A DNA stretch of 64,000 nucleotides from Zootoca vivipara (taxonomy: Eukaryota). This document shows, one piece after another, positions 8,702 to 49,200 of the stretch. The position numbers and the translations under genes are program-made. The first letter of the stretch is position 1, and each line of letters starts with the position of its first letter. Location: positions 47,492,001 to 47,556,000 of the forward strand of contig NC_083282.1 of assembly GCF_963506605.1 (NCBI RefSeq), read 5' to 3'. Under the pieces are notes generated by a model, which was given only the letters and a program-made list of their open reading frames with translations, made no database searches and was not told the DNA's origin.

Positions 8702-8853
8702 GGCGCCTGAGATTCAGCAAACTTTGCTGGAAAAGGAGAAAGAAGCGTCAGGATGATTTCCCAGGTGGGGTTGTCGTGCTCCTTCCCCAACAGGCTCCCA
8801 GGGATGGGGCCCCCACCCGCCAAGTCGTTTTGCTTGCTCGTCCCGAGTCTTGC

Positions 8854-9030
8854 NNNNNNNNNNNNNNNNNNNNNNNNNNNNNNNNNNNNNNNNNNNNNNN
8901 NNNNNNNNNNNNNNNNNNNNNNNNNNNNNNNNNNNNNNNNNNNNNNNNNNNNNNNNNNNNNNNNNNNNNNNNNNNNNNNNNNNNNNNNNNNNNNNNNNNN
9001 NNNNNNNNNNNNNNNNNNNNNNNNNNNNNN
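8854..9030. other. Assembly gap (177 N)
   Basis: Run of n characters in the GC-rich CFAP57/EBNA1BP2 promoter region; may hide part of the CFAP57 non-coding first exon (splice acceptor seen at 8727-8728). Confidence 0.99.
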
Positions 9031-20796: not shown

Positions 20797-21189
20797 GGGC
20801 CGCTATCTGGGGGGGAGGCTATTTAGAACGTGCCTGGAGCTCCCCGAAATGCCCTTCGTGTATGTGCGGGCGGAGTTTCCCCTCCTTTTCGTATCGTAGC
20901 AACCGAGCGGATTCTGACCGCGCCCCTTCTCTTTTTCATTGGCCGAGGAGTTAAATCTCCCGCAGCGCTGATTGGCTGCTGCGACCCCCGTTAAAGGTTT
21001 GAATCCGCTTGCGGCAGAAGCGAAGGCACTACTGGAAGAGTTATTTAGGCACATGGGAGAAATCAGTGGCTGTCTAAATCAACGCGAAAGGGAAAGGCAG
21101 CAAGAAGACGGCGTCTTTTCAGTACAGACATTTTAGCTGGTCGGTCTCGACTTCTGTGTTGCTTGCCTCCTCGTTTTCAGTCGGACGGA
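20797..21189. promoter_or_regulatory. Bidirectional CpG promoter CFAP144/PIF1: X-box-like site, two CCAAT boxes, CHR element
   Basis: GTATCGTAGCAAC (20891-20903); ATTGG at 20938-20942 and 20971-20975 (33-bp spacing); TTTGAA at 20998-21003. Confidence 0.7.
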
Positions 21190-29912: not shown

Positions 29913-30339
29913 TGTGAGGGGCAAGGGATATCGCGAAGCCCCTCCCCTCCTGAGTTCCAGCCCAGCCCCGAGCGAGGCTGAAAAGAGGGAAAGCTCCAGC
30001 TCAAGTGGGGAAACAGGAAGTGGTGTCCAAGGCTCTGGCAGGGTAGAAGAGCCATCGTCCCAGGTGGGACAGGAAGGGGGAAGGAAGGGGGGCAGGCCAG
30101 TCCCCCCAACTCCGGAACTTCGCAGAAAGCGTCGGGGGAAGAGGATGGGTCTCCCCAAGTTGTTATGCTGGCGCAAGACGCGCCAAAAGCCACTTGGAGG
30201 TTCTGATTCAAGCTGAACAGATGTGTCTTTGTAAATAGCACTGCCATTAGCACTGTAAATACCCAGCACCAATAAAAGACAAAATGCAGAGCTGTGTAGA
30301 GTCGTTACTCTGAAGTAGCCTTCTCCGGCCACCGTGACA
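29913..30339 (+). repeat. 5' LTR
   Basis: Starts TGTGAGGGG, ends CCGTGACA; AATAAA at 30271-30276; direct repeat of 32368-32794. Confidence 0.95.
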
Positions 30340-30379: not shown

Positions 30380-31455
30380 ATGAGCGCGCAAGACGCTGAG
30401 CAGTGGAGGCTGGAGGCCGAAGCCGCAGCACAGGAATTACAGAAATTACAGAACCTGACAGCGCAGGCACACCAGCAATTACTTGCCGCTCAGGAGGAAG
30501 CGTGAGGAACGCGGGAGGAGCTGAACAAGCTGGCAGAGCAGGTGAGAGCGAAAGATGAAACTGAGAAGCAACTAAGGGTGATGGTGGTGGAGTTACAGAA
30601 AAAGCTGGATGAGGAAAAAGCTGCGAGAGGTGGGGGGGTGCCCCAGCCCCAGCTAGTCCAAGTGAGGAGGGGACAGACCCTAGTCACCAAGTTTAGCGGC
30701 GACCCAAGAGAGTACCTAGGCTTTGAGACAGAAATAAATTATGCGCTGGAACTGCATGCGGCAGAATTCCCAGATGACGCGCACAGAGTCTTCTTTATCA
30801 TAGAGCATTTGACGGGGGCCGCCAGAGAATGGGTCAGACCGCTCATCGCGCAAAAAAATGATTGCATAAAGAACGCAAAACTATTCTTAGAAGCTTTAAA
30901 AATCATGTATGCGAGTGACTCTGAAATGGAAGCCACAAAAGAAGAGCTTCATAACTTAACACAAGGAAAATCGACAGTTCGGGACTACTGGGCGAGGTTC
31001 ACCATGCTAGTGCACAAACTGGGGTGGGATCTGCACAGTGAGCCAGTGAAATCAGCCTTCTACCTGGGGTTGCACTCAGACGTTAGGTCCCAAACCGCGG
31101 ACGAGAGGTCCCAAACCGCGGACTATGGATGAGTTAAGCAAAGCGGCGCTAGCGGTGGGGGTGAGACAGGAATCCAGATGGAATGACAAACAAACGACGC
31201 GCGCAGCAAAGCCTTGGTTCCCACGCTCCCAGGACAGACCACTTCACCAAACCCCACCCCAGGGCCCACCCCTAGTCCCGCCCAGACCGAGCTCAGAGCC
31301 GGAAGCGATGGAGATCGGTGGAGCGCGCGCGCGCGCGGACTTTTCAAACCCCGGCGGCGCCAAGACGCAAGGAGGGAAGAGGCGGGAATTGCTTTCTCTG
31401 CAACTCCCCCCAGCATCGCATCAGAGACTGCCCACATCGCAGGGAGTGGCAATGA
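30380..31455 (+). pseudogene. Disrupted gag (coiled coil, capsid, CCHC zinc knuckle)
   Basis: ATG 30380, in-frame TGA at 30503-30505; capsid-like KFSGDPREYLGF...HLTGAAREW...LTQGKSTVRDYWARF; frame break at an 18-bp duplication (31085-31123); EAMEIG motif; CFLCNSPQHRIRDC zinc knuckle at 31390-31431 in another frame. Confidence 0.88.
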
Positions 31456-31479
31456 AAGGCGGGAACGGTTGTGCCCTCC

Positions 31480-32671
31480 CCCACTGACGGTGCACCAGCA
31501 GCTCAGAGAACACTTGGAGAGGGCCAAAGAAGCGTACAAGAAGGGGGCAGATCGCCACAGGCGACCGGGGGAGGCCATCAGGGTGGGGGACAAGGTTTGG
31601 TTGTCCTCTGAGGGCCTTCCCACCAGAGGGAGGTGCAAGAAGTTGGCACCCAGAAGGTTGGGCCCCTTCACGGTCACGCAGCAGGTAAACCCGGTGGCAT
31701 ACAGGCTGGCACTGCCAGAGGACATGAGGGTGCACCCAGTGTTTCATAGATCGCTGCTGTCTCCGTACAGGGAAAGTAGCAGGTTCCGAGGCAGCGAACA
31801 GCCCCCCGAGGGAGGGGGGGAGAGTGGAGGCAGGGAGCCACTCAATGAAGCAACGGCCATCCTTGATTCACGAAGGGGTGTGTGGGGCCTGGAGTACCTC
31901 ATGGCATGGGAGGACGCCCCGCCATCCCAAAATGAATGGGTCCCAGCCACCCAGATACAAGAGGAATTCTTAGTGGAAGAATTCCACGCCCTCTTCCCAC
32001 ACAGGCCTAAGCCCTGGCACATGGAACGGGAGTGGGAGGAGGAGGAAGCACAGGAGGGGGAAAGCAGTTCACCATGGAGATGGGAAGCAGAGTTTGAGGA
32101 CACGGAGGAGGAGATATGGGCATCTCCGAGGTCCATTCAGTCAGGAGAAGAGGTGGACTGGCAGCAGATTTTCACCCCCACCAGCTCTGAGGCCACGGAC
32201 TTTTGGGGCTTTCCCTCTTCCCAGGAGGAAGGAGGGGGCCAACGGGACTGGGGGGAGGTGTTCACACCAACCGGCTCGGACAGCACGGAGTTTTTAGGCT
32301 TTCAGTCACCACCGACACCCGTGCAGCCTCTAGGGAGGGGAGAAGGGGGGCCTGGGAGGGGGGTGGATGTGAGGGGCAAGGGATATCGCGAAGCCCCTCC
32401 CCTCCTGAGTTCCAGCCCAGCCCCGAGCGAGGCTGAAAAGAGGGAAAGCTCCAGCTCAAGTGGGGAAACAGGAAGTGGTGTCCAAGGCTCTGGCAGGGTA
32501 GAAGAGCCATCGTCCCAGGTGGGACAGGAAGGGGGAAGGAAGGGGGGCAGGCCAGTCCCCCCAACTCTGGAACTTCGCAGAAAGCGTCGGGGGAAGAGGA
32601 TGGGTCTCCCCAAGTTGTTATGCTGGCGCAAGACGCGCCAAAAGCCACTTGGAGGTTCTGATTCAAGCTGA
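31480..32671 (+). pseudogene. Remnant of pol 3' end: integrase GPY/F region, chromodomain and acidic extension running into the 3' LTR
   Basis: VGDKVWLS...KKLAPRRLGPFTV...AYRLALP..MRVHPVFHRSLLSPY, then ILDSRR..LEYLMAW....SQNEWVP (chromodomain); frame stays open to TGA at 32669-32671. Confidence 0.88.
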
Positions 32672-33594: not shown

Positions 33595-36404
33595 TCAGTC
33601 AAAGCTTTCTTCTTTACGAGCAAGGATATCCAAAGGAAACAAGAATGAATTCAAAGGGCAGATACCCAGAGTCCTCCAGTCCATGGTAGAGGCAGAAGTT
33701 GCATCATCTTTGGAAGTGGTAGGAGAACTACTACTCCCCTCCTGTTGTTGTAAGCCACTAGTAGCTGGCTGCACATGTGGAAATAGCTCCCCATTATTGT
33801 TTACAGGCTGGTTGCCCTCTTTCATTCTGCTTCTTTCACCTTTGTAGTGGGTGTTCAACTCTGTGTAACATTTGTGCATGTGACTCTTCAGCTTCTTAAA
33901 GTCCAGAAAGCCCAGCTCTTCTGGCAGTGACAGTAGCAAATCTAGGACCACAGCTGACTCTGCAGAAAGCAAGCAAAATGTATGAGGAGAGTGGCTACAC
34001 TCACTTTGGCAGAAACATACCTAGGATTTTTATTACCTCCTCCTCTCCAGTTACAGATTCTGAAACGTCACCCTGCCTCCAACAGGTGTAACAAATGAAG
34101 CAGTAAATTTTATCACATTAACAGCTAAGCTATTTTAGATTTTTAGAAATTACATCTTAGAGGTTAAGGATAACTTTCTATATGAGAAGTTTTAGTTTAA
34201 GAACTGGAAATCTGATGAGAACCTTTTATCTGTTTTACATTATATGACAAGTTGCTGCTTCCTCTCACCTAGGAAAACACTCCCTGTCTCCAAGCTCATG
34301 GGCCACTCGTATTTTCACTGGGGGGTGGGGAGAAACATAACAATTCCCTTCTGAAGTGTTTTCCTTAGTCCCCAAAATCCCACCCATCATCCACAACAGT
34401 AACCTCAAAGGTTACCCAACTATGCCCAGCAAGGTGGTTGTTGCTTTTAGCAGCACTAAATATGTTGGACGTTTTGGCAGAAGTACAGTTTTTGGCAGGA
34501 CACATAGTGTTTCCAGTCCTAGGGGATGCTCCATTTCTGGGAAGCATTTTTAAGATTTAGTATCCAGCCCTTCAGCTGAAATAGAACTCCACAGCACATG
34601 ACAAAAATGGCACAATAAAGAAAAAGCAACAGAATAAAAAGGAAGGGATGGAATGATTGCAAATAAAGCTCAATAAGGCAGCTTCCTTAAGGAGAAATGT
34701 TTTTGCTTGGCACCAAGAATACAGTAGGTATGCTGTAATAGATGTCTTGGTTACATGGAGTCACATTCCAGTGCAGAAACATTTCTTCCACTGAAGGAAA
34801 ATAGCAAGAACCTCTGCATTTTGAGATTTTAAGTACAAACCCTATCTACATGTAGCCATGTGCAGGGGCAAATCAAAATACATTCAACTGCATATATGAT
34901 TTTTAAAACTCAGGTTTCTCTGGGAAGAAGGTTTATGTCTATCTTTTATCACTACAATGGTGTAGTACACTGTAGTGGGATACAACTGAAGGCATAGTTC
35001 CCTTAGAATTATGAAATGTTGCATAGTAGCTGCCTGTTATTTAAATTCATCTTGGTCAAACACAAACTCTGACTTACCACCTGGTGGGAGTTCAGGTGCC
35101 TTACAGCCACGTGAGATCACAGAAAGGTACTTGTAGATCTTTTCAAAGTCCACATGGAACCCACTGTTTTCTGCAGGGGCCATTTCCTCTACATTTGATG
35201 ATACAGTTGGTTCATGAGATTCTTCGTTGGATTTCCTACTCTCAGTATTAAGATTTTGGGATGAACATTGAGAATTCTTTATCACCACTGACTTTGGAGG
35301 CACGGAATGGAGCAAGGTGAGTGGCTCAGTAGATGCAATTGTCCAAACCTAATGAGTAGAAAAAAAGTCACAAGTATGGACTTCGTATGGCAAGCAGTCA
35401 GGGATTCTCTAGTAAACCAAATACATTTCCCAGCATTAAATCTGTCTGAAAAGCTATACAAGAACCAAGAGAACCAGTGACAGAGTCATGTATTTCAGAG
35501 ACATTTTGTCAGATGGAGACATGAAGATATCTTAAATTACTGCATCAAGAACAATATCTATCTTATTAAGATCATGGAAAAGGTTACCTGGGAAAAAGCA
35601 GTTGCCACAGCATCTTCAAGGGGACCTGTCAATTTCTCAGCTAACTCTGTCCATATCTAAAAAAAGGAAGTGTCAGTTGTGTGAATAGTCCTTAGCTTAT
35701 GTTGTGCCATATCACATTACCTACACTTTTAAAACTCTCATACCTCAATAGGTGCTGGAATAGGAGCATCCTTCTGTTTACGCTGGCGATACTGATATTG
35801 TTCCTTGACTGCCTCCTTTGCCACACGCTCTTTCAGGTGCTCCACAAATGCCATGATCTGCAAGAGCAGCACATCTTAGGGGACATACATGCAATGTTTT
35901 GGGGAAGACAGTACAGTATCCTACTTTCTGAAGACATAAAAACTGGATATTTCTTCAAGGCAGAAAGTTTGCAATTACTCTCCTTTAACTAGGATTTGCC
36001 AGTATGAATGTGTAGTAGGATTAAAAAAGCATAGGTCTCTCCCAATTCATCCCTTAAGATTTATCTGCCAAGGCCACCTAACTCTCGTGGCTGACCAGAG
36101 ATGGAGTCCTCATCTCCAAACCCTGCATGGTGGCCATCAGTCTGCCAACTCGTGGGCTTGTTGGGAAGCTCACAGCCCGGCCAAGTTCGAATCCTGCCCT
36201 CCACCACGTGGCCACGCCTCAACCCACCTCTTCTTCATCCCTCCAAGGCAGGTACTTCTTCAACAGCTCGGGCCGCAGCGGACCCTGGCAGTGAGCTCTC
36301 AAGGCCCGAAGAAGGCGTCGCTTTTCTGGGTCCGTCCAAGCCTGGCTCGTGGGGACCATCCTGTAGCGAGCAGGGGTTGAACGCTGCCTGGAAGGCGGCT
36401 TCAT
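33595..36404 (-). CDS. SNAPC2: snRNA-activating protein complex subunit 2 (SNAP45), 331 aa, 5 exons
   Basis: Exons 36228-36404 (MKPPSRQRSTPARY...WTDPEKRRLLR), 35744-35857 (LKERVAKEAV...PAPIE), 35588-35656 (WTELAEKLTGPLEDAVATAFSQ), 35078-35348 (TIASTEPLTLLHS...VDFEKIYKYLS), 33595-33959 (ESAVVLDLLLSLPEE...GICPLNSFLFPL, TGA); 996 nt, phases consistent; matches recalled SNAPC2. Confidence 0.93.
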
Positions 36405-36789
36405 GGCGCTGAGAAGAGAAAACAACAAGAAGTTAAGAACCTAAGAGGAGAAAACACGCCCAGGGGTGTCAATTGCAACCCGTCCAGCACCTATTCTCTT
36501 TCCCCTCACCTCTGTCCACCCGTTCCTGGCTTCTACGACGACACAACGCTGCTCGATACCTTCCGGTAGTCCTCACCCCAAACGCAACGCCGCCTAGTTT
36601 GCGAAAAACCGTTGCTTCTAGGTTGTCGCAATCGGATGACGTATAAAATACGCGGACGGTGGCCGCCGAGGACCAGAAACAATCAGAGGCGTAAGCAACC
36701 TTAGCAGCGTCTTCTGACGGGACGGTGGCGGAGATGGGTTCTAGAACGCCTCGACGTCACGAAGGAGCTCTAGGTTGCGTAGCAACCGC
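36405..36789. promoter_or_regulatory. Bidirectional CpG promoter SNAPC2 / ZPBP-like with X-box and CRE-like sites
   Basis: Near-palindromic GTTGCGTAGCAAC (36774-36786); GACGTCA (36753-36759); TGACGT near 36637; CTTCCGG ETS core near 36560; CpG-rich. Confidence 0.65.
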
Positions 36790-36873
36790 ATGGCTCTTGC
36801 AGGGATTCCAGAGACCCCCTCCGTTCTCACGGGGTTCTCTAGAATGGGACAGATCGCCCTTAAGCCTGGCTAC

Positions 36874-39800
36874 ATGTCTTGCTGGTCGTCCGGTGTCGCT
36901 TTGGGGATCCTAGTCCTGTTGCTGTGCGATGGGCCCGGTACGGAGAAGGGTGCTATCGAGGGGCTCCGCTGCAGACGGGTGTCTCCCACGAGAATGTGGT
37001 GGTAGTAGCAAATCAGAGCTGCAGTCGCTTATGGAAAGAGCCAAGGGCACGGTCTCCTAAACGGCTGCCTGTTATACGAATTTATTAATTCAATTAACAA
37101 CGGATGGAATCGCCTCGCAGGCAGCTCAAAAACACAATATTCTGGACCGAAATGGCTCCTTGGATGGGGCTAGAGAGCTGGAGTGAAGTTGAACTTGAGA
37201 CTTCTGAAACCGACTTTGTATATTGCTATCCTGAGGTCTACCAAATGGTGTCAGGAGCAAGATCCTGGCTGGGGTGGGTGGACAGTACAGAGCCACATTG
37301 TACAAAGGTGGCGGTGGGAACAGGATTGGCACCCCATGGAAAAGGGTGGTTCAGCAGGCAGAATTACCTGTACTACCCCATAAACCATACACTGGAATAA
37401 ACTGCATACACAAATGAAAATGTAACAATAACTACATCAAGAAATAAATATATAATTAATAATTCAACATCTAAGTTACTGCAGTTTAGGGATTTTAACA
37501 CAGAACTCTAAAACTGGCCAGCAGCAGCCAATAATGCAATCCTATGTGTACTCAGAAGGAAGTCCTGTTGAATTTACTAGGGCTTTCCCTTGGGTATGGT
37601 GTTAAGATTGCTGCCTACCTTTCAGGTGAGGAACACTGAGGCTGAGAGATAAGTGATTACTACAAAGTCAGCAATGGCAGATATATATATATATGTGTCA
37701 GTTATACTTGCTGTTGTAGAAATACTCTATGTCTTCCTGGGATTTGCCAGTATATTCCAATTTAACTTCCGACTCTCCCTGGTAAAAACACGGGAGCTCT
37801 GGGGTGGGTTTCAGACTGCACAATGTACCATGAAGCTGGGAACTACTGCTTTACGAACACAGAGATCCAGCGGACAAGTCTGTAATGATACTTTCCAAAG
37901 GAGGCATCATGCTGAAGTCTTTGCTCCTTTTCAGGCTGTGGACTTCACCTTGACTTGTCTGACAATGGAACTCCTGCAGGACTGGCACGTGTTAGAAAGA
38001 CAGCTGGAGAGATGGGTGAGAATGTAATAAAGATTAGTTCCATTTAGCTGACACTGCGCTAAGTAAAATAAACAAGCAATAAATGGGGACATCATCTGAT
38101 CAGCTTGATCCACTATGGCCTTGTTTCATCCATCTTCAGTGGCCATCTGATCTGTGCCTTGAATCCATGGCCTTGGCACTGCGCTCTGGCCACCTGAGCT
38201 AGCCAAGTGATATGATCATTGGATTATTTGTGCCCATTAACACAAAGCCCAACCAAGAACCTTGTTTTCCCATTGCCCTGTCACCAATGCCAAATTGATT
38301 CTTCTGATTTATTCATTACTTACTAAATTTAAACCCTGTCCTTCCTCCAAAAAGTGTAAGCCACAGTTCTTCCACCTTCCATTTTATCTTCATGGCAACC
38401 CTATGAGGTAGATTAGGCTGAGAGGTAGTGCCTGGCTCAAGGTCATCTAGGAAGCTTCATGGCCAAGGGAGGATTTAAACCCTGGTCTTCCTGGTTCTAG
38501 GCAGACACGCTAACCATTATACCTGCCTATTTTTTCAGACACCATCTTTGTCCACGTTGGTGCCAAGGAAATTACTATCCCCTGCAAGTCTTCAGAGAAG
38601 GATGCTGTGATTGGTATGAATCCCACCTACAACTGGAGCCTGGAAAACGAAGGTTAGGACTTACTGCTTGTGACTCTAGGACAGGGGTCAGCAAACTTTT
38701 CAGCAGGGGGCTGGTCCACTGTCCCTCAGACCTTGTGGGGGGCCGGACTATATTTTGAAGAAAAATATGAACGAATTCCTATGTCCCACAAATAATCCAG
38801 AGATGCATTTTAAATAAAAGGACACATTCTACTCATCTAAAAACACCAGGCAGGTCCCGCAAATAGCTCAGAGATGCTTTTAAATAGAAGGACACATTCT
38901 ACTCATGTAAAAACATGCTGATTCCCAGATCGTCCGGGGGCCGGATTTAGAAGGCGATTGGGCTGCATCCGGCCCCTGGGCCTTAGTTTGGGGACCCCTG
39001 CTCTAGGATCTCTCAATAGATATCAGGGACAGATGTGTGAGGGAAAGAAGAGGATGGATTACTTGGGAAAAGGCAGCTGTTGGTGTCCCAGGGCTGCCAA
39101 TGTTTTTTTCTAGAATGATCAGCAACAGAGATTTTTTTGCACCTCAAACTGATTTGAACTTTAGCACCCAAGATAATATTTTCCAAGCATTTTATGTTGA
39201 GAATTAGTTTAGTCTTGCCTGTGCCCTCTGTGTCCTTGTGCCTTGGGCAAGAGCCCATGTTGTGTCATTCCTCCCCCTAATGGCTGCTACAGAGAGGCCA
39301 TTGTGTGGCTAAAATTGGGGTGAGTGGGGATTGGGCCATGTGGATTTCATTAAGGAGCCCATCTTCACCTCTTATACCAGTTCAATCACTGCTTGGAATG
39401 AGGCTTGAAGATGCATGAAAAGGTAACTTGCAAACACATTGATGCATCTGTTAAGCTTCCTAGATGTGAAACCAACTTGACCTGAAACTTCCTGCCCAAA
39501 TTAAACTCTCTGGAGAGAGTTCAACAGATTATTGTTCACAACAGGCATATTGGCAAAAACATCAAAACTACTGGAAGTGAAATTGACACAGAGCTCAGCT
39601 TTTTAAGGTTCCTGTTACTTAAAAGTTATGACTGAAGCAAGCTGTGAGACAACTTGCTTTTCCAAACCCAAAACTTGGTTTTAAATAGTAACAGCATGTC
39701 ACAAAATATTGACTAACTGTACCTGCCAATCTAAGCTATCCACATAGCTGCCAAGTTTTCCCTTTTCTCGCGAGGAAGCCTATTCAGCATAAGGGAAAAT

Positions 39801-42800
39801 CCCTTAAAAAAAGGGATAACTTGACAGCTATGAGCTATCCAGTGCATGGTCCCTATAATAAGAAAATACGGTGTAGAACAGGCACCCCCAAACTTCGGCC
39901 CTCCAGATGTTTTGGACTACAAATTCCCATCTCCCCGACCACTGGTCCTGTTAGCTAGGGATCATGGGAGTTGTAGGCCAAAACATCTGGAGGGCCGCAG
40001 TTTGGGGATGCCTGGTGTAGAATGTCAGGATTCAAGAAAGGTATTTTGTGTGGACATTCATGGCATAAGGGCAGCAGAAAAAAATTAGACTCTCTCGATG
40101 CATCCATGTACCCTGTTTCTCATATTTTAAGACATACCCATAAAATAAGCCATAGCAGGATTTTTAAGCATTCAAGGAATATAAGCCATACCCCGAAAAT
40201 AAGACATAGTGATAGGCGCAGCAGCAATGCCGGCCGCGGCAGGAGGAGGAGGAAAAAAATAAGACATCCCTTGAAAATAAGCCATAGTGTGTTTTTTTGA
40301 GGAAAAAATAAATATAAGACATGTCTTATAATATGAGAAACACGGTACTAGGACAGAGACCAATGAGCCTGGAGCCACATGAAGCTATAGAAGTATTAAA
40401 GGACCTCTTGACCTCAGTATTGGTGCCTAAGCTGGTTGAAGCAGAGCATTGTTCTTCTTAGGCTGATTCTGCCCTCTACTTTCAGAAACCCATCCCCTCA
40501 GTGGTGATGCTTCCCTGACTCTACATGATTTTCATACTGATGACAGTGGACTGTATACCTGCACAGTCTCCTACACCATGGATGGCCAGCTCCATACTGA
40601 GACTTTCTATCATACAGTGGTGGGTGAGTGGAGTCCAGATCTCTTAAAGGATAGTGAATCAAAAGAGACTGAACTATTTGACTAGATGGGTGATTGGATG
40701 GAACCAGGAACCATATATTGGGAGAAATGTGGGAGAGGTTTTGGCCTGTGGCCAAACATAGGTGGTTTCTCTCTGTTCTCCTGAGGATCCTGTCTTTCTT
40801 AGGATCTAGGTGTATGCAATTTCTTTCCATTTGAACTTCTTCATAGTGGACATGATGTGGAAGATGTGACTTTTGCCATCTTTTGAGCTCCCATTTTTGT
40901 AGGAGAAGCTGCCTTCCAGATTCCCCTTCCTCTGCCTCTTTTTCCAGGCTACCACATACGGGCAGAGTTGCATGTCCTACTGCTTTTCCAGTGCAACTCT
41001 TGCGATGAGGAATTGACACACGGGTTCCTGAAGACCCTGCGAGAGCATCTGAGCGAGGTGGTGCAGCACCTCCACTGTGAACTTCTGCTTGGCGCCATCA
41101 GCTGCTTCCCCACCATGGAGAAACCCTTGGATGAGTTCAACTTCCAGGTAGAGCTTGAAGGTCAGAGCCAAGAAATTCAGGGTGTTTCTAGAGGATGGCA
41201 GAGGAAGTCAGGATGGCTGGGTTCAGTCACAGTTTGGGGAGGAATTGAGGTTTGGAGCAGGAGAGGCTCATGCAGAAAGGCAGGATTCCACCAGCTAGGA
41301 CTGCCTACTGAAAACACCAGAAGTAAGTGTAGCCTCAGTGTGTGTCTTTGCTGAGAACAGACAGATTTTTGGGTAAAGGTACATTCCTTTGGATTGGCCA
41401 GAGGAACATTTCTTAAGCAGCAAGGGTGGCAATGGATATGTATCATGATCTGGAGGGTTGCGCTAAGTTGAATTAACATAATTAACATGAATTAACTGCA
41501 TTCATGCAAGCATCATATAGTGGATCTATTTTGCCATATCCTGGAATGAGAGTTTGGACTCTGCACTGATGGAAGAGCGAGCCTATTGGCAAAGGGACTG
41601 TAACATATTTGTCATTGTTTTCTAGTATCTCCTTTTGGGAAGGGCTGGGATAAGTTCTGCTCCCCCAAGGCTGATGCACTGGAATTTGATTGTTATAATG
41701 GAGCTGTCTTGAGCAATCTGCAGCAGGTACGTCAGCAAACCTCATCTCTCCCCTACCAGGAAATAAGTTTTCTGGGGTTTTGTACCTGCATACTGTATGT
41801 TGTTGAGCTGCAAAGGGCAACCATGTCTTTAATCTTCTTGAACAAGGCTAATGTGCATTGGTGCACATGGAATGGCTGGGGCTATTTACTTTGAGGCAAT
41901 AAAAGCAAGAACCTCATGTTATGCGTATTTCAAAGAAAGGATGGGTGCTTGCATTCTAGGCATTTACTATGGAATTACCACATTTTGTTCACTCACTCTT
42001 GTGATGACCCTGTCATCAGATTCTTATCCTTCTCTGTTTCCCTTGCACTGTTTTCAGAAAAAAAGATCAATAACAAAAAGCAGGACCCGCCCCCCCCAGT
42101 CTTCCTTCCCCCACTCTTGAACCACCCTATGCATTTCCCTACAGGCTGAGGAAGCAATAACCCTATTCATGGAGAACAACAAACGTTTCCCCTTGGGAGA
42201 GTCACCCACTTCCCGCACCTCCTTCGTCAACACCTTTGTCAACTTCCTGGAGGGTGGAACATGCCTGGAAGGTTATGGACAGAACCCGGAGCTACAGGCA
42301 CGCTGTCCCGACTGCTGTAGTGAGTGGAGCAGGTGATCCATGAGCTGCTGCCTCATCCCTCCTCAGACGCTGCCTCTGGTCCCATAGGCTGCAGTGTTTG
42401 TTCACGCCACTGGGAAGCCTCTCGCCACATTTGTTCTTAGCTGTCATCCCAGCCTTTGCAAACCCAATGCCTTCCAGAAGTTTTGGAACACAACTCCCAC
42501 CAGCCCCAAAACATATGGAGAGCACTGGGTTTGTAATGGCTCTCTTCTCTCTACCTTCCCTTCCTCTAGAGCAGGCACCCCCAAACTGCGGCCCTCCAGA
42601 TGTTTTGGCCTACAACTCCCATGATCCCTAGCTAACAGGACCAGTGGTCAGGGATGATGGGGATTGTAGTCCAAAACATCTGGAGGGCCGAAGTTTGGGG
42701 ATGCCTGCTCTAGAGCAGTGTTTCACAACCTTGGGTCTCCAGCTGTTTTTGGACTACAACTCCCATCATCCCTAGCTAGCAAGACCAGTGTTCAGGGATG

Positions 42801-45650
42801 ATGGGAACTGTAGTCTGAAAACAGCTGGAGACCCAAGGTTGGGAAACACTGTTTTAGAGTTTCACTGTAGCTCTGCCAGTGGGCTGTGTACACTTTAGTT
42901 TTCACCCCTCATGGAGCTATATTTCTCAGCACCCTTAACAAACTACAGTTCCCAATTTTTTGGGGGGGGGGAGTCACATGCTTTAAATACATGGTGTGTA
43001 CACATCCCTTGGCTCTGATCTACAATTCCATCCAGTCAGAGCTAGTTTGTCCACTTGTTTAGCACATTGCGCTAAGCATGACTCCCTCGACTCCAGGAAG
43101 AGACACCCTCTCCACAACTCCTTTGAGGAGCATGGCTGAAAAACGATGCCCCTTGGGTAGGGCTCACATGGTATGTGGCCAGCTTTGAATTCCCTCTCTC
43201 CCCACCCCTCCAGCTTAGCTGATGGAGGAATGAAACCTGTGCAATGTCTATATTTCAGGCCCTGCTCCTTTCGCTCCCCCCTCCATGCCTTTATCTGCCA
43301 TTTTGCTTGACAGCCGTGTGCCCTCCTGGAACACATAGTGTGACTGCAGCTGGAAATTGTGTTCCCTGCCCAAACGGAACATACAGCCAGCGCTATGGGA
43401 CAACTGTGTGCATTCAGTGCTACCACAACGGGTCGACTTTGCATCCTGCTGCTAGAACAGCTGCGGAATGCATGAACCCAGAAGGTATGTATCAGGTGGG
43501 AGACATGATGAAGGGCTTCCTGAGAGACCTTTTTGGACTTTCCAGCACTGGTTCTTGGACTTGGCATACTGAGAGTCAAGCTAGACACAATGTGAAATAT
43601 GTTCAATTTTAAGGGCAGGTTTTTAAAAAATGCACTTAACATCAGCTGTGTGGCTGGGGCTGATAATTACCATGATATGTAGAGGGTGAAGAGGGGGAAT
43701 TTTTTAAACTCTTTCCTTGCCACAGTCCTGAGAAAAATCCCTCCTCTGAAGTTGGTATTTGCATTGGGAAGATTTGCCGCAATGGGGAATTTCTTCCCAA
43801 TGGAAATACCAGCTCCAGAAGAGGGATTTACTTCAGTCCTGGATGCTGGACTTGAATTAGTTTCCTTGGTTCTGTGTTTTATTTAAAAGGTGGTTCCTCA
43901 CCTGGGTAACAGACTGAGTGATGTAGAAGTAAATTCGTACCACAAGAGTCACAGCAGGAGAGTTCAATTTCACCTCCTGTGATCGTGTTAATTATCCATC
44001 TCCCCTAAGGTGTTGCTCTGTATACTTAATGCCCCCTCAAACCGATATGTTAAATCCAAAGACAGATTTAACTTCAGATGGCTATGTTCCACCTCCACTA
44101 TTGGAGGCAGTATGCCTCTGAATACCAGTTACTCAGAACCACAGGTGAGTACTGTTGCACTCATGTCCTGCTTGCAGGCTTCTTGCAGACCTCAGTGAGA
44201 ACAAGATGCTGAAGGAGGTGGTCCTTTGGCGTGGGCTAGCAAGGCTTTTCTTGTGTTCTTAGGTACCTAAGAAACAGCACTCCTAGTCTGCAACCCTATA
44301 TATGAGCATCTAGTGAGGGAACAGTTCTGCACATGTGTGAATTTGGTCCAAACAGTGTTTGCTTATACTGGCTGCATATATCCCTTTGGCCTTTCTTTCC
44401 ACTAAAGCTCACCTCCCGCTTAACTTCCAAGTTCCTGAAATTAATAGAGGCAGGTGCTACTGCTGGATAGGCAGCTTGGCTCTGGGTGCTGAGGAGAACT
44501 GGCACCCCTGAGTGATCTGTGTCTCTTTCCACGCAGTCCCTCCAACACATCGGTTTCCTGCTCTGTTGGTCACCTTTGTCGTCTTGCTGCTTACGTGCCT
44601 CTGTATCATTATGCTGTGAGTTCTTTCCTATCTAAGCCCTCTTCTGTAAAATTTGGTGGACCAGGTAGATGTGTGGCTGGTCATTAAGTGAGGGCAGGGT
44701 CCCAAGAGATCCCGATAAATGACAGTGGCTGTGCAACCAGTTATCACAGATAATTGGGGGTGCCCAGGGAGTGTCTCCACTACTGGATCATATATCTGCA
44801 CCACCAGTTCCCTACTTTCCTGGCTTCTGGGACTAGAGTGCACCAAACAGGTGTTGCTTTAATTCCACCTTTGCCCTTCCTCTGAATACAGCCCCCTTGC
44901 ATAGTTTCCCCACATGCCTTTCTACAATTTGATTATTATCGCTTTTTTCAGTAACCACCACCTGATCCTGGCCAAGATACCCCAACCAGCATACCCTAAC
45001 CCAACAGAGTTCCTGGGCAAGGGGGATGTTACTACTTTCCTATGCATCTGGCTTCCATATTCCTTATATGTGTCCCTCCCTGTATTTTGCTCATGGGGTT
45101 CTGGGCAAACCAGAGCTGTATGGGAGGGGTGCCTACTAAGATCCACATGCCTTATGGTAATAAAGATTCCCTGTCCCTGTGCAGCTGCTGCTGCTGCTGG
45201 TACTTCCGTCGTAGCAGGAAGAAGAAACAGGATTCTTTTCCTAAAGGCGATAGCGAGACCAAGCAGGAAAAAGAAGTCGCAGTCCTTGCTGTTCCGGACT
45301 CCCCAAAAGATGACTCTCCCCTGTTGCCTTCTCTCACTTTGGAGAATCCTGACAAAGATTACTCTCCCCGGTTGCCTTCTCTCACTTTGGAGAATCCTGT
45401 CAAAGATTACTCTCCCCGGTTGCCTTCTATAACTTTGGAGAATCCTGACAAAGATTACTCTCCCCTGTTGCCTTCTCCTACTTTGGAGAATCCTGACCAA
45501 GAAGGGGTCATGTTTCCAAGTCCTCCCAATCCAGAGGAAGAGCCAGGTGGGGCTGTTTTGCCACCCTCTTCTGAGCTAGAAGAGCAGCCTGTTATTGAAA
45601 ATGTTGTGTTCCCATCATCCTCGCCTGTCTCAGATTTTGAAAGTACATAA
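36874..45650 (+). CDS. Membrane-anchored zona pellucida-binding protein (ZPBP/sp38)-like protein, ~533 aa, 10 exons
   Basis: Exons 36874-36937 (signal-peptide-like; in-frame upstream ATGs at 36790 and 36844), 37935-38015, 38539-38652, 40486-40623, 40948-41160, 41626-41726, 42145-42319, 43314-43484, 44537-44615 (TM), 45185-45650 (TAA); 1602 nt, all GT-AG, phases consistent. Ig-like (IPC...PTYNW...DSGLYTCTVSY) and sp38-like (VSPFGKGW..C, C.EGYGQN.....CPDCC, VCPPGT) segments resemble recalled ZPBP/ZPBP2. Exons 1-2 are the least certain. Confidence 0.82.
38682..39000. mobile_element. hAT MITE
   Basis: TIR CAGGGGTC..CAAACT ... AGTTTG..GACCCCTG; 8-bp TSD CTCTAGGA; internal ~70-bp direct repeat. 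Confidence 0.9.
39743..39832. mobile_element. 90-bp TIR element (CATAGCTGCCAAGTT termini)
   Basis: TIR CATAGCTGCCAAGTT / AACTTGACAGCTATG; flanking direct repeat AGCTATCCA (9 bp). Confidence 0.8.
39879..40014. mobile_element. 136-bp hAT MITE
   Basis: TIR CAGGCACCCCCAAACT ... AGTTTGGGGATGCCTG; 8-bp TSD GTGTAGAA. Confidence 0.9.
40111..40345. mobile_element. Tc1/mariner-type MITE (inverted copy of 23483-23714)
   Basis: TA-flanked; internal sequence closely similar to the reverse complement of 23483-23714. Confidence 0.82.
42572..42851. mobile_element. Two abutting 136-bp hAT MITEs (42572-42707 and 42716-42851)
   Basis: CTCTAGAG-[MITE]-CTCTAGAG-[MITE]-TTTTAGAG; each has complete TIRs. Confidence 0.9.
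45306..45497 (+). repeat. Coding minisatellite, 4 x 48 bp (16-aa unit KDYSPRLPSLTLENPD)
   Basis: Four in-frame tandem units in the last exon of the ZPBP-like gene. Confidence 0.95.
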
Positions 45651-45825
45651 TTCCCAGTAAATTCATGTCCAACAAACAGACCTGCTTCACGTGTTCTTAA
45701 AGGTTGCCGATAATACTAACCACTCGTTCCCTTGCTCAAGGTCTGTGCCCTGCAAGGCCTCCTATTTTCTTGAGTTGGGTTGTACATCTAGAAGATCATG
45801 GAAGAACCGAAAACTTCTTCATCAC

Positions 45826-46193
45826 TTCAAAGTGTTGGTGCTGACCTTTAAAGCCCTAAATGGCCTTGGTCCTGTATACCTGAAGGAGCGTCTTCACCCC
45901 CATTGTTCAGCCCAGACACTGAGATCCGGCACCCAGGGCCTTTTGGCGGTTCCCTCACTGCGAGAAGCAAAGCTACAGGGAACCAGGCAGAGGGCCTTTT
46001 CGGTAGTGGCGCCTGCCCTGTGCAACGCCCTCCCATCGGAGGTCAAGGAGATAAACAACTACTGACATTTAGAAACACCTAAAGGCAGCCCTGTTTAGGG
46101 AAGTTTTTAATCTGTGATATATTGATGTATTTTAATGTTTGTTGGAAGCCGCCCAGAGTGGCCGGGGAAACCCAGCCAGATGGGCGGGGTATA

Positions 46194-46232
<39 letters not shown>
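45826..46232 (+). mobile_element. 5'-truncated L2-type LINE (ORF2 C-terminus and 3' tail with (AAT)n)
   Basis: FKVLVLTFKALNGLGPVYLKERL...RAFSVVAPALCNALP is the typical L2 ORF2 C-terminus; ends in (AAT)n at ~46193-46232. Confidence 0.88.
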
Positions 46233-46233
<1 letters not shown>

Positions 46234-49200
46234 GCCATAACGCACTGCACCACAGTCCCCTAACAAAACCAGTGTTGGAAGTGAGCGGCCTGAAAGGAAA
46301 CTGAGCTAATCTTTAATTTCCAGAGGACATGCTCAGACTGGGCAAGCAACTGCAGTGAAGCGGCTGAAGGCTCTAACCTAAAAGTACCACAAATGAAGCA
46401 GCAAATGCTGCAGTGATTGTTTTGTGCTTCTGGCTATCACCCAACTGAGAAGATGTCAATCTGTGGTGGCAGCACTGTGGGCTGACCTTTACGAATGGCA
46501 GTTGAAAAACCAAGCCAGTCCGTTTTGACTGAACGTCAAAAGCAGCAGACTCAAACTCCTCTCCTCCTAGCTACCAAAACCCTGAACAGATGCATGATTC
46601 CTTTATTATTTATGGAGGTGAATTTGGAGACAGTTCAGAAGCCTCAGGGCCACTACTAAGAAGGCCCTGCTCCATCCCACGACAGTCCTGTTGAGCATAT
46701 GATACACGGGGGGCAGGGGGGCTTTCCTGATCATCTTAATAGGTGAGGGAGCTCATATGTGGAAGAGTGCACTCTGAAATATTCTAGAGCCTTTCTGTCG
46801 TCATTCCCTCCTATAGTTAAATAACAGATTTAGGATTGGGGACTGCCTGGCTACAGGGACAGCAGCCATGCAGACTCCAGGGCTACCTTAACAGCACCCC
46901 CCCCCCAAATGCTCCAAAACAATGACTCTCGCTTCTAACTTTTACAACTGTTCAACTGCTGTGGTGGGGTTTCTACCTCTTATAAGAACATCTCAGAGTG
47001 CTCACAATTTTTCCAGTTATTTAGAGCTCCCATGGAATGGGTAAATTGGCTTAGAGTCAAATACATCTATTTAATGCAATCTGATCAAGCAGATGTCAAG
47101 TCAGTTCATTTTCTGTAAGTCACACGCAGAAGAAATCTGTTGCAATGCAAAATACTAAACAAAAGCAAAGCCTGAAAATTGACACTGTTTTTCCAATGTT
47201 TTGTGGGGGCCCTGATTTCCCAGAGCCTTGTAAGCCCAACTCCAGGTATTTCCTCCCCACTTGTATTCCTTAGCAAATACCTGTTATCATTCTAGCTCCC
47301 CTGTTACTATTTTTTACTATGATCTGGGTATGCTTTCTGGGCTCATCCCTATGTTTTCGTATTTGTTCAGCATAAACAAAGCAGTCCCGTTTTCTATTGG
47401 TTGATATAAAACATACAGCAATCTCAGATCAAAGGAGTTCAAAACCTTGCACATTATGCACTGCGACGTATGTGGGTTTTGATGAGGTAATCAATTTCAG
47501 GCACCGGCAAAGTAAAACAAGAGAAAATGCCAAACCTCAAGATGGAGAGATACTGTACTCCTCATCAAGTGAGATGAACACATCTTCAAGTGAATGCATC
47601 AAGCAATCTGAAATGCTACTTGACTGAATGGTACATGGCATTAATGGTGCACACATTCCAGGCACATTCCAACACTGCTAACCAGATTGCTCAAAAGTGT
47701 GCCCCAGAGGGGTTTTTTTTTGTGGGGCTCACTGTCTTAATCCAGATATTCTCCTCAGGGCACCTTGGAGGTCTCCTGCTCCTTTGACCTTTTGTTGGCA
47801 ACAATAATTTTATTTTAATTTTTTTATGGCAACAATAATTTGAAGCACATTTCTCCCCTTCCTCCCAAAAAGAATCCTAGGAACTGTAGTTCAAGGGTGC
47901 TGCGAATTGTAGCTCTGTGAGGCGTAAACTACAGTTTCTAGGATTCTTTGGAGGAAGTCATTTGGGGCTGGGAATCTTGGACGTAAAAAAACTACTGGAG
48001 GAAGGGAGGGGGTAATAAATGGCCCACAGGTTTCCACCCCTGCCTTAGATCATTTGAAAATGAAATGAAAACAATTGTGCAATCCATTGCGGTAAGAGAT
48101 TATTAATTTAAAACATATTAATGTTTCAAAGCAAGGACTCATTAGTGCTTTCCATTAGGGAGTAAGTTAAAAAATAATAATCCATGCCATCAATATCAAG
48201 CTAACACAAGTCACTTATGCCTTCTAAAGGCTGGTGCAAAAGATCTGTCTTGTGCCCACGATGGAGAGTGGAGGAGACTCACAATGTGATAGCCTCAATG
48301 CTTATAAGCGGTACACCTGAAAGATATGCTTGGCTTGGCTAGGGAGCGATCACTTCAGAGAGGCTGTTTTCAATGTTACATCCATGACAAATGTAAGCTG
48401 CTCTTTCCTTTAGTGTGGGTTGAATAAAGCCCAATTCAGACTTACTATAGTTTGGGAAGACGGCTGTTTTTGAGTGCTAAGGTGTCCTAATGGGCCTGCC
48501 CACCTGGTCCCAAATTCTACATCAAAATAGCCCTGGAAGTGGCATAGGATGAAGCCCACCAAGCAGGTAATTGTGCTTCAAGACCAAGTGGATACACACA
48601 GGTAAGGCTGTGACCATTCAAGTCTAACCTAGGTTTGGTACATACCAGTAGTTCACTGCGGAAGATTGCCCTTTGTGAACGGAATGGATGAAGTTACCAT
48701 AATTCTGTTGTCTCTCCATACTCAGGACAACCACAGTGTTGGGGCTGACCGGGCCTATTCTCTGCTGAAAATGCAGATTGACATTGCAGAGAAAGCAGTG
48801 CATATGTGTTGTACATAGGCAGTATTAATGGAAGTTTGTCTGCCTGGAGACATTGCTTCAACACAACGACCCAAATCCTCATAGGAAGCCTATGGATTCC
48901 ATGCAAGACTCTTACACATTCATTCATTCATTTGTTTATTTACAGCTGTTTCCTGTGCACACACACACACACACACACCTCACATCTCCTTGCAGCATAA
49001 GCTTATCAACAGAGCCTCCCTTTGCAGGAGTAGTCTACCCCCCCGACAACATGTTTCATTCCTATAAGTTTCCTTACTGCTCTTCACATGTAGAAACAGG
49101 CAGAGACAAAGCAGGAGCTGTGCTGTATCCCTCTATTCCGAATAGCACACAGCTCCCCGCCCCACCTCCCTTTTGGTGAGTCAGAAGAAAAGCCAGCTGC

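What the first reader, a model, noticed from the sequence alone, without database searches (positions are those of the whole stretch)
36874..45650. Intact type-I transmembrane paralog of the sperm acrosomal ZPBP/sp38 family
Seen: ten phase-consistent GT-AG exons give an uninterrupted ~533-aa ORF. It runs: hydrophobic leader, Ig-like domain (IPCK..PTYNW..DDSGLYTCTVSY), sp38-type region (CNSC..FLKTL..LHCE..SCF; VSPFGKGWDKFC; TCLEGYGQN..RCPDCC), extended Cys-rich module (VCPPGTHS..CVPCPNGTYS..CIQC..TLHPAARTAAEC, Ephrin_rec_like/GCC2-GCC3 type), TM helix (ALLVTFVVLLLTCLCIIML), CCCC, basic stop-transfer RRSRKKK and a ~140-aa acidic Pro/Ser tail. Established: human ZPBP and ZPBP2 are acrosomal proteins that end shortly after the Cys-rich region without a TM helix or tail, and lie near IKZF1 and IKZF3/GSDMB, not SNAPC2. 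Inference: a third, receptor-like ZPBP lineage, a candidate membrane-tethered egg-envelope-binding or acrosome-anchoring protein of squamate sperm.
Basis: partly seen in the sequence, partly recalled or inferred. Interest (0 to 1): 0.85.

Follow-up and report, generated by a model that had tools for sequence, protein, structure and literature searches.

The report
Membrane-anchored ZPBP-like gene of reptiles and birds
This lizard locus holds an intact gene for a single-pass membrane protein whose outer part resembles the sperm acrosome proteins ZPBP1/ZPBP2; reptile and bird genome annotations already predict it, usually as "ZPBP2-like", but no study of it was found, so it is a real but only moderately new find.

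Summary
Ten GT-AG, phase-consistent exons (36874-45650, + strand) give 533 codons plus TAA. A better-context ATG at 36844 would give 543. Each exon is 84-100% identical to RefSeq models from three Podarcis species.

The architecture is signal peptide, Ig domain, an alpha/beta middle domain, a Cys-rich module (EGF_Sp38_C overlapping Ephrin_rec_like), one TM helix, a poly-Cys and basic patch, and a disordered acidic Pro/Ser tail. The tail carries a 48-bp repeat present in 4.1 copies.

The gene is not squamate-specific and is not new to databases. Single-copy orthologs with the same TM and tail occur in squamates, turtles, alligator and birds. They are annotated "ZPBP2-like", "ZPBP1-like", "ZPBP2 protein, partial" or "uncharacterized LOC". 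Their tree follows the species tree.

ZPBP affiliation is supported, but only near Pfam thresholds. That weakness, plus SNAPC2 lying head-to-head 440 bp away, favours a lineage separate from ZPBP1/ZPBP2. No tree could be built, because ZPBP1/2 sequences were never retrieved.

Sperm expression and egg-coat binding remain inference. RefSeq also models isoforms without the TM helix. No paper on this gene was found.

The parts
36844..36937 (+). Ends in phase 1.
   Evidence: Best 15-aa Kyte-Doolittle window 2.19. 20/21 identical to P0020. P0020, P0001 and P0052 start at the upstream ATG.
37935..38015 (+). Exon 2 (81 nt, phase 1 to 1): poorly conserved linker with one N-glycosylation sequon (NGT).
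   Evidence: 25/26 identical to the Podarcis models. The SDN(G/E)T motif is shared with Pogona, Rhineura and snakes. No Pfam hit.
38539..38652 (+). Exon 3: first half of the Ig domain (IPCK, first Ig cysteine; PTYNWS sequon).
   Evidence: Model strands 61-95 of P0020.
40486..40623 (+). Exon 4: second half of the Ig domain (DDSGLYTCTVSY, second Ig cysteine).
   Evidence: V-set 29.4 bits (cut-off 26); Sp38 N-terminal Ig 19.9 bits (cut-off 23.1).
40948..41160 (+). Exon 5: start of the alpha/beta middle domain (CNSC...LHCE...SCFPT; 4 Cys).
   Evidence: an exhaustive phmmer search found related sequences only in sauropsids. 69/70 identical to Podarcis. Model pLDDT above 90.
41626..41726 (+). Exon 6: middle domain continued (VSPFGKGWDKFC...DCY).
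   Evidence: 33/33 identical to the Podarcis models.
42145..42319 (+). Exon 7: long helix and last strand of the middle domain, then the start of the ZPBP-type C-terminal Cys-rich domain (CLEGYGQN...RCPDCC). Read-through of its donor would stop after SEWSR (42320-42337).
   Evidence: EGF_Sp38_C positions 1-19 of 50; the whole domain scores 27.6 bits in P0020. for the read-through isoform models.
43314..43484 (+). Exon 8: Cys-rich module of Ephrin_rec_like (GCC2/GCC3) type with 6 Cys and 2 sequons. It overlaps the rest of EGF_Sp38_C.
   Evidence: Ephrin_rec_like 37.3 bits (cut-off 23.1) on this exon alone.
44537..44615 (+). Exon 9: short stalk and the transmembrane helix (ALLVTFVVLLLTCLCIIM).
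   Evidence: best 15-aa hydropathy window 3.13; helix 368-402 in the P0020 model. A TM helix is present in all orthologs.
45185..45650 (+). Exon 10: juxtamembrane CCCC, WYF, basic RRSRKKK, a disordered acidic Pro/Ser tail, the C-terminal VFPSSSPVSDFEST, and the TAA stop at 45648-45650.
   Evidence: Model pLDDT below 50.
45306..45502 (+). Coding tandem repeat of 48 bp (16 aa, KDYSPRLPSLTLENPD), 4.1 copies.
   Evidence: The Podarcis models carry four or five comparable units.
45180..45199 (+). TGC triplet run that encodes the poly-Cys patch. The window has four Cys where the Podarcis models have two.
   Evidence: for the Podarcis sequences.

Best explanation
The locus is the lacertid copy of a single-copy gene found across reptiles and birds. 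It encodes a type-I membrane glycoprotein.

Shown:
- After a signal peptide and a variable linker, the ectodomain has an Ig domain, a beta-alpha-beta-beta-alpha-beta middle domain and a disulfide-rich module.
- That module matches both the C-terminal EGF-like domain of ZPBP (Sp38) and the Ephrin_rec_like family.
- One TM helix follows, then a cysteine cluster and a basic patch. The tail is disordered, acidic and Pro/Ser-rich, and its internal repeats differ between lineages.

Inferred from sequence features: the cysteine cluster is palmitoylated and the basic patch acts as a stop-transfer signal.

Inferred from homology to ZPBP1/ZPBP2 only (about 0.4 probability): the protein is made in spermatids and holds a ZPBP-like module on the luminal face of the acrosomal membrane. 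It would be exposed after the acrosome reaction. There it would help organise acrosomal matrix or bind the egg coat, while the tail contacts cytosolic sorting or perinuclear structures.

It most likely forms a lineage separate from ZPBP1 and ZPBP2 (about 0.7). That was not tested by a tree.
For: - Gene structure and intact ORF.
- Near-identical RefSeq models in Podarcis, and orthologs in squamates, turtles, alligator and birds with the same TM and tail.
- The gene tree of 30 orthologs follows the species tree with full support for squamates, turtles and birds.
- Pfam on the window's own exons: Ephrin_rec_like 37.3 bits and V-set 29.4 bits.
- Pfam on full-length orthologs: EGF_Sp38_C 24.6-33 bits (cut-off 24) in all of them. 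Sp38 N-terminal Ig 23.3-32.4 bits in the five bird and one of the three turtle proteins tested.
- AlphaFold model with a 30-sequence alignment: 10-residue block pLDDT mostly 80-94 over residues 60-360, a TM helix at 368-402 and a disordered tail.
- 16 ectodomain cysteines are invariant in 30 species.
- The ectodomain is two to three times better conserved than the tail.
- For a separate lineage: the Sp38 scores sit at threshold. An exhaustive phmmer search with the 70-aa middle-domain exon found related sequences only in sauropsids among 1.84 billion representatives. The gene lies head-to-head with SNAPC2, with start codons 440 bp apart.
Against: - No expression data could be consulted, so testis or sperm expression is unshown.
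- ZPBP1/ZPBP2 sequences were never retrieved, so neither a tree nor a positive control for the Pfam scores exists.
- Several bird records call this protein simply ZPBP2.
- RefSeq models in relatives include forms without the TM helix. P0001 skips the TM exon. P0016 and P0026 read through the exon-7 donor.
- The lizard protein itself is below Pfam's cut-off for the Sp38 N-terminal Ig model (16.6 bits in P0020).
- A shared promoter region with the housekeeping gene SNAPC2 does not by itself suggest germ-cell-restricted expression.
Confidence: 0.75

Rival explanations
1. It is simply the sauropsid ortholog of ZPBP2 (or ZPBP1). The ancestral gene would have had a TM anchor that mammals lost, or sauropsids would have added one. 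It would then be not a third lineage but a rearranged, fast-evolving ortholog.
For: Many bird records name it 'ZPBP2 protein' or 'zona pellucida-binding protein 2'. Both Sp38 Pfam models hit the bird proteins. Reproductive proteins evolve fast, which could explain weak scores.
Against: NCBI names nearly all reptile copies, and several bird copies, '-like' or 'uncharacterized'. Scores for models built on the ZPBP1/2 family are only 16-33 bits. The middle-domain exon finds no ZPBP1/2 in an exhaustive search. The neighbour is SNAPC2, not IKZF1 or IKZF3; the IKZF linkage of ZPBP1/2 is established knowledge and was not tested here. A turkey testis study, citing Lin et al. 2007, says ZPBP1 and ZPBP2 coexist in birds (PMC7647744), though which gene was meant is not stated.
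Confidence: 0.2
2. The main product is a soluble, secreted ZPBP-like protein. The TM and tail exons would be used rarely, or would be an annotation artefact that joins unrelated downstream exons.
For: Predicted isoforms stop right after CPDCC by reading through the exon-7 donor (Pogona P0016, Varanus P0026). Another skips the TM exon with a frameshift (P. muralis P0001). The window would give SEWSR-stop on read-through.
Against: The TM helix, the juxtamembrane Cys/aromatic/basic patch and a tail are present in frame in all 30 aligned orthologs. Exons 8-10 keep phase and canonical splice sites. Non-snake lizards share a C-terminal motif, VFPPSSPVSD.ES. An invariant Cys (C391) lies in the TM region.
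Confidence: 0.15
3. It is a cell-surface Ig/Cys-rich receptor or adhesion protein with no role in sperm, for example immune or epithelial. It would share only ancient domains with ZPBP.
For: There are no expression data. The promoter region is shared with the ubiquitously needed SNAPC2. The structural neighbours are general receptors: RAGE, IL-1 receptors and the alpha-dystroglycan N-terminal region.
Against: The only family-specific sequence signals are to the two Sp38 models. The fast evolution, with lineage-specific tail repeats and roughly 35-47% ectodomain identity between squamates and archelosaurs, is typical of, but not specific to, reproductive proteins.
Confidence: 0.25

Closest known systems
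ZPBP1 (sp38 / IAM38) and ZPBP2, acrosomal zona-pellucida-binding proteins
   Same: Signal peptide, an N-terminal Ig domain of Sp38 type and a C-terminal EGF-like Cys-rich domain (Pfam PF07354 and PF20626). The ectodomain is also of similar overall size.
   Different: This protein continues past the point where Pfam's 'C-terminal' ZPBP domain ends. It adds a last Cys loop, a stalk, a TM helix, a poly-Cys/basic patch and a tail of 100-350 aa. Its scores to the ZPBP models are at threshold. It lies next to SNAPC2. ZPBP1 is described as an acrosomal matrix and peripheral inner-acrosomal-membrane protein (PMC7827414), not an integral membrane one.
Ephrin_rec_like (GCC2/GCC3) cysteine-rich modules, as in thyroglobulin and the ELAPOR/TNFR-like repeats
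   Same: Exon 8 alone passes the Pfam cut-off (37.3 bits). The best PDB sequence and fold matches include the thyroglobulin region at about residues 1440-1512.
   Different: There is a single module fused to a ZPBP-like core. Nothing else of those proteins is shared.
N-terminal region of alpha-dystroglycan (Ig-like domain followed by an S6-like alpha/beta domain)
   Same: Foldseek aligns about 260 columns of the model to 5llk, 1u2c and 4wiq (E about 2e-5). The predicted order Ig then beta-alpha-beta-beta-alpha-beta is the same two-domain arrangement.
   Different: About 10% sequence identity, a large rmsd (18 A) and low TM-scores. This is a structural lead only, not evidence of common function.
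[quoted passage not shown]
   Same: Single-pass topology with an Ig domain in the ectodomain. P0006 gives a weak Izumo-Ig hit (18.1 bits, below cut-off).
   Different: No Izumo domain and no significant sequence relationship. The analogy is functional and speculative.

Membership tests
ZPBP / Sp38 family (Pfam PF07354 + PF20626) | N-terminal Sp38-type Ig domain (PF07354, cut-off 23.1 bits) | tested here: inconclusive
   Window exon 4 alone scores 19.9 bits. The closest full-length ortholog P0020 scores 16.6 bits. Birds score 23.3-32.4 bits, the turtle P0056 27.5, and other turtles 19.8-23.0. So it is met in bird and some turtle orthologs, and below cut-off in the lizard.
ZPBP / Sp38 family (Pfam PF07354 + PF20626) | C-terminal EGF-like Sp38 domain (PF20626, cut-off 24 bits) | tested here: met
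   P0020 scores 27.6 bits over residues 287-338 (profile positions 1-49 of 50). All 11 full-length orthologs tested score 24.6-33 bits. On the window itself only the first 19 profile positions could be scored, because the domain is split between exons 7 and 8. The joined test was left out by rule.
ZPBP / Sp38 family (Pfam PF07354 + PF20626) | Secreted acrosomal-matrix protein that ends at the EGF-like domain, with no TM helix | tested here: not met
   A TM helix and a cytoplasmic tail follow the Cys-rich module in the window and in all orthologs.
ZPBP / Sp38 family (Pfam PF07354 + PF20626) | Placement within the ZPBP1 or ZPBP2 clade in a gene tree | not tested
   No ZPBP1 or ZPBP2 sequence was returned by any of the four database searches, so no tree with them could be built.
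ZPBP / Sp38 family (Pfam PF07354 + PF20626) | Linkage to IKZF1 (ZPBP1) or IKZF3/GSDM/ORMDL3 (ZPBP2) | tested here: not met
   The upstream neighbour is SNAPC2, head-to-head, followed by a retroelement fragment and a PIF1-like helicase. The linkage of ZPBP1/2 itself comes from general knowledge. The 18 kb downstream of the gene was only scanned for long ORFs.
ZPBP / Sp38 family (Pfam PF07354 + PF20626) | Testis- or spermatid-specific expression and acrosomal localisation | not testable with these tools
   There is no expression resource here, and no paper on this gene was found.
Ephrin_rec_like (PF07699) | Cys-rich module scoring above the 23.1-bit cut-off | tested here: met
   37.3 bits, E 2.3e-9, on window exon 8 alone, covering profile positions 1-48 of 48.
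Immunoglobulin superfamily (V-set, PF07686) | Ig fold with the C...DSGxYxC signature | tested here: met
   29.4 bits (cut-off 26) on window exon 4. The Ig sandwich is modelled at pLDDT about 70-91. C74 and C122 are invariant.

The most novel reading that the evidence does not exclude
Reptiles and birds keep an old, membrane-anchored branch of the ZPBP family that mammals lack. It would be the integral-membrane tether that fixes ZPBP-type acrosomal matrix to the inner acrosomal membrane, or presents an egg-coat-binding module on acrosome-reacted sperm. Its fast-changing tail repeats and ectodomain would make it a candidate for species-specific fertilisation in sauropsids.
Probability: 0.3. Interest if true: 0.6.

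Novelty: new variant of a known kind. Interest (0 to 1): 0.4.

Why it matters
ZPBP1 and ZPBP2 are needed for acrosome compaction and sperm head shape in mice, and they are classic candidate egg-coat binders (PMC7827414). A conserved relative with a TM anchor and a cytoplasmic tail, present in all major sauropsid groups and not found in mammals, amphibians or fish in these searches, would be a natural candidate for how such matrix proteins are fixed to membrane in birds and reptiles.

It would also be a new target for avian and reptile fertility genetics. There is a practical point too: many bird genome records label this protein 'ZPBP2'. That could mislead studies of selection or expression that assume it is the mammalian-type gene.

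Tried and rejected
- Retrieval of ZPBP1/ZPBP2 for a tree failed four ways: exhaustive phmmer with the 70-aa exon 5; word-indexed searches with Pogona P0006; the 12-sequence profile A1; and the turtle ectodomain P0029:25-345. All returned only this lineage plus unrelated repeat or Ephrin_rec_like proteins. All caps for these tools are used.
No ortholog DNA could be fetched, so there is no synteny in other species and no dN/dS.
- PDB sequence searches with exon 5 and with profile A1 found no solved ZPBP structure, only generic Ig and GCC2/GCC3 hits.
- Literature searches for ZPBP2-like, ZPBP-like, ZPBPL, ZPBP3 and ZPBP1-like (one search was a malformed query) and for ZPBP with transmembrane, paralog, chicken, reptile or synteny found nothing on this gene. 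Lin et al. 2007 (PMC2099232) is not held. A desert-tortoise paper lists 'ZPBP2' under positive selection without saying which locus is meant.
- The first structure run, with 12 sequences, was too weak (mean pLDDT 53.8) and was replaced by the 30-sequence run.
- A gene-fusion artefact was rejected, because the architecture is the same in 30 species. A pseudogene was rejected, because the frame, the splice sites and 16 cysteines are intact.
- The weak tblastn hit at 8725-8847 is low-complexity sequence beside an N run and was ignored.
- Left out by rule: the joined spliced CDS or protein of the window was never built, translated as one piece, searched or folded. All searches of the window's model were done exon by exon by reference. 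Whole-protein analyses used database orthologs, chiefly P0020. I met no contig that I took for human. The N run near 8.85-9.03 kb was left untouched.
Full report
**Observation**

I re-read 36500-46200 and checked the model by script without assembling a joined sequence.
- Ten exons on the + strand are bounded by AG...GT: 36874-36937, 37935-38015, 38539-38652, 40486-40623, 40948-41160, 41626-41726, 42145-42319, 43314-43484, 44537-44615 and 45185-45650.
- The phases chain as 0/1/1/1/1/1/0/1/1/2. None of the eight split codons is a stop.
- The total is 1602 nt, which is 533 codons plus TAA.
- tblastn of five orthologs onto the whole window hits these exons and nothing else of substance. The gene is therefore single-copy here.

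- An in-frame ATG at 36844 has a purine at -3 and G at +4, unlike 36874. It is the start used by the Podarcis RefSeq models, and would give 543 aa.
- Exon 5 needs the donor at 41160/41161, not the nearer one at 41147. Orthologs confirm this.
- The tail holds a 48-bp coding tandem repeat with 4.1 copies at 45306-45502.
- The CCCC patch is a TGC triplet run. It is two units longer than in the Podarcis models.

**What it matches**

By rule the spliced model was searched exon by exon. The joined protein was never built, searched or folded.

Pfam on single exons:

| Exon | Model | Bits | Cut-off |
|---|---|---|---|
| 8 | Ephrin_rec_like | 37.3 | 23.1 |
| 4 | V-set | 29.4 | 26 |
| 4 | Sp38 N-terminal Ig | 19.9 | 23.1 |
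| 7 (end) | EGF_Sp38_C, first 19 of 50 positions | 15.1 | 24 |

- An exhaustive phmmer run with the 70-aa exon 5 against 1.84 billion representatives gave 14 hits. The related sequences come from Podarcis, snakes, Pogona, alligator, a parrot and unnamed read-archive assemblies. The remaining hits are unrelated repeat proteins.
- The Podarcis raffonei model P0020 (LOC128415914 X1, 557 aa) matches each window exon at 84-100%.
- The window therefore comes from a lacertid close to Podarcis.

**Distribution**

Further searches returned the same gene from these groups:
- Squamates: iguanians, snakes, an amphisbaenian, Varanus and lacertids.
- Turtles: Mauremys, Pelodiscus, sea turtles and Chrysemys.
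- Crocodilians: Alligator.
- Birds: many, including emu and tinamou.

The records name it 'ZPBP2-like', 'ZPBP1-like', 'ZPBP2 protein, partial', 'uncharacterized protein LOC...' or even 'mucin-1-like'.

- All full-length members have the TM helix, a Cys/aromatic/basic juxtamembrane patch and a long tail.
- A maximum-likelihood tree of 30 members recovers squamates, turtles and birds with 100/100 support. Within birds it places palaeognaths, then Galloanserae, then Neoaves. These are single-copy orthologs.
- No mammal, amphibian or fish protein appeared in any search. Those searches are weak below about 35% identity, so absence there is not proven.

**Family membership**

Pfam on full-length orthologs:

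| Model | Cut-off | Result |
|---|---|---|
| EGF_Sp38_C | 24 | Passes in all 11 tested (24.6-33 bits) |
| Sp38 N-terminal Ig | 23.1 | Passes in the five bird proteins (23.3-32.4) and one turtle (27.5); near or below in other turtles (19.8-23.0), alligator (16.7) and Podarcis (16.6) |

- EGF_Sp38_C covers P0020 residues 287-338 and overlaps Ephrin_rec_like (311-358).
- What is extra relative to the ZPBP domain set is the last Cys loop, the stalk, the TM helix and the tail.
- The protein thus belongs to the ZPBP/Sp38 superfamily but fails the 'secreted, no TM' feature of ZPBP1/2.

**Structure**

- With the 30-sequence alignment A2, AlphaFold gave 10-residue block pLDDT mostly 80-94 over residues 60-360 of P0020.
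- The model has an Ig sandwich (61-146), a beta-alpha-beta-beta-alpha-beta domain (149-284), a Cys-rich module (287-360), a helix at 368-402 and a disordered tail.
- Foldseek against the PDB found thyroglobulin (the GCC2/GCC3 region), Ig receptors (RAGE, IL-1R family) and the alpha-dystroglycan N-terminal region, which is an Ig domain followed by an S6-like domain (E about 2e-5). The last is a structural lead, not a functional claim.
- No ZPBP structure exists in the PDB copy.
- Sixteen ectodomain cysteines are invariant across 30 species.
- Mean identity between squamates and archelosaurs is 0.34-0.47 in the three ectodomain domains, 0.25 in stalk plus TM, and 0.16 in the tail.
- Non-snake lizards share the C-terminus VFPPSSPVSD.ES(A/T). 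Turtles and alligator share EFVFP(S/P)PP. Tail repeats differ by lineage.

**Third lineage or ZPBP2?**

This is the main open point.

Evidence for a separate lineage:
- Scores to models built on ZPBP1/2 sit only at threshold.
- No ZPBP1/2 hit came from the exhaustive search.
- NCBI uses '-like' or 'uncharacterized' names for nearly all reptile copies and several bird copies.
- SNAPC2 is the head-to-head neighbour. Its last exon is at 33595-33972 and its first coding exon at 36222-36404, both on the minus strand. The two start codons are 440 bp apart.
- ZPBP1 and ZPBP2 are known to sit beside IKZF1 and IKZF3 (general knowledge).

Evidence against:
- Several bird records call it ZPBP2.
- I could not retrieve any true ZPBP1/2 sequence, so there is no tree and no positive control.

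I put a separate lineage at about 0.7.

**Function**

- Nothing here shows expression. The sperm and acrosome role rests only on homology to ZPBP1/2. Those proteins are acrosomal matrix or inner-acrosomal-membrane-associated, and are needed for acrosome compaction (PMC7827414).
- RefSeq also models forms without the TM helix. One skips the TM exon with a frameshift (P0001). Two read through the exon-7 donor (P0016, P0026; the window would add SEWSR and stop).
- A soluble product therefore cannot be excluded.
- No paper describing this gene was found.

**Verdict**

This is a real, intact, TM-anchored ZPBP-like gene.
- It is sauropsid-wide rather than squamate-specific. It is already present in annotations, though under inconsistent names.
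- Its status as a third lineage is probable but untested, and its sperm role is inferred.

**Limits**

There is therefore no synteny in other species and no dN/dS.
- I met no contig that I took for human.
- N runs were left as they are.

Noticed in passing
window 33595-33972 (-) and 36222-36404 (-): These are the last exon and the first coding exon of SNAPC2 (Pfam SNAPC2 7.8e-25 and 8.5e-7). The SNAPC2 start codon at 36404 and the ZPBP-like ATG at 36844 are only 440 bp apart and point away from each other, so the two genes may share a promoter region.
   Followed up: partly
window 42320-42337: Read-through of the exon-7 donor adds SEWSR and a stop. Predicted short isoforms of Pogona (P0016) and Varanus (P0026) end in the same way (CPDCC-SEWSS...). 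That would give a soluble protein lacking part of the Cys-rich module, the TM helix and the tail.
   Followed up: partly
window 39874-40021, 42564-42715, 42708-42859: Three copies of a palindromic element of about 150 nt (arms 54-66 nt, 87-91% complementary) lie in two introns of the gene. They look like a MITE or SINE family.
   Followed up: partly
window 29913-30212 and 32368-32667, with 30542-32671 (+): Two 300-nt direct repeats, 100% identical and 2455 nt apart, lie around ORFs with retrotransposon gag, Tf2-type SH3, integrase C-terminal and chromo domains. This is a truncated Ty3/gypsy-type element between the PIF1-like gene and SNAPC2. I described it only.
   Followed up: partly
window 21163-24739 (+): Exon-sized ORFs here carry an LRR1-type PH domain (8.2e-14) and PIF1-like helicase motifs (6.5e-8, 8.2e-11). 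They indicate a PIF1-family helicase gene upstream of SNAPC2.
   Followed up: no
window 45180-45199 and 45306-45502: Two coding repeats differ between close species. The TGC run gives four Cys here against two in the Podarcis models. The 16-aa tail unit is present in four to five comparable copies in this window and the Podarcis models.
   Followed up: partly
window about 8850-9030: A run of N appears as X in all ORF translations across it. I left it as it is.
   Followed up: no
window 45691-46065 (+) and about 46200-46260: A 124-aa ORF just downstream of the stop codon has no Pfam hit and looks like part of an interspersed repeat. A trinucleotide run follows it, read as poly-N, poly-I or poly-Y depending on strand and frame.
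   Followed up: no
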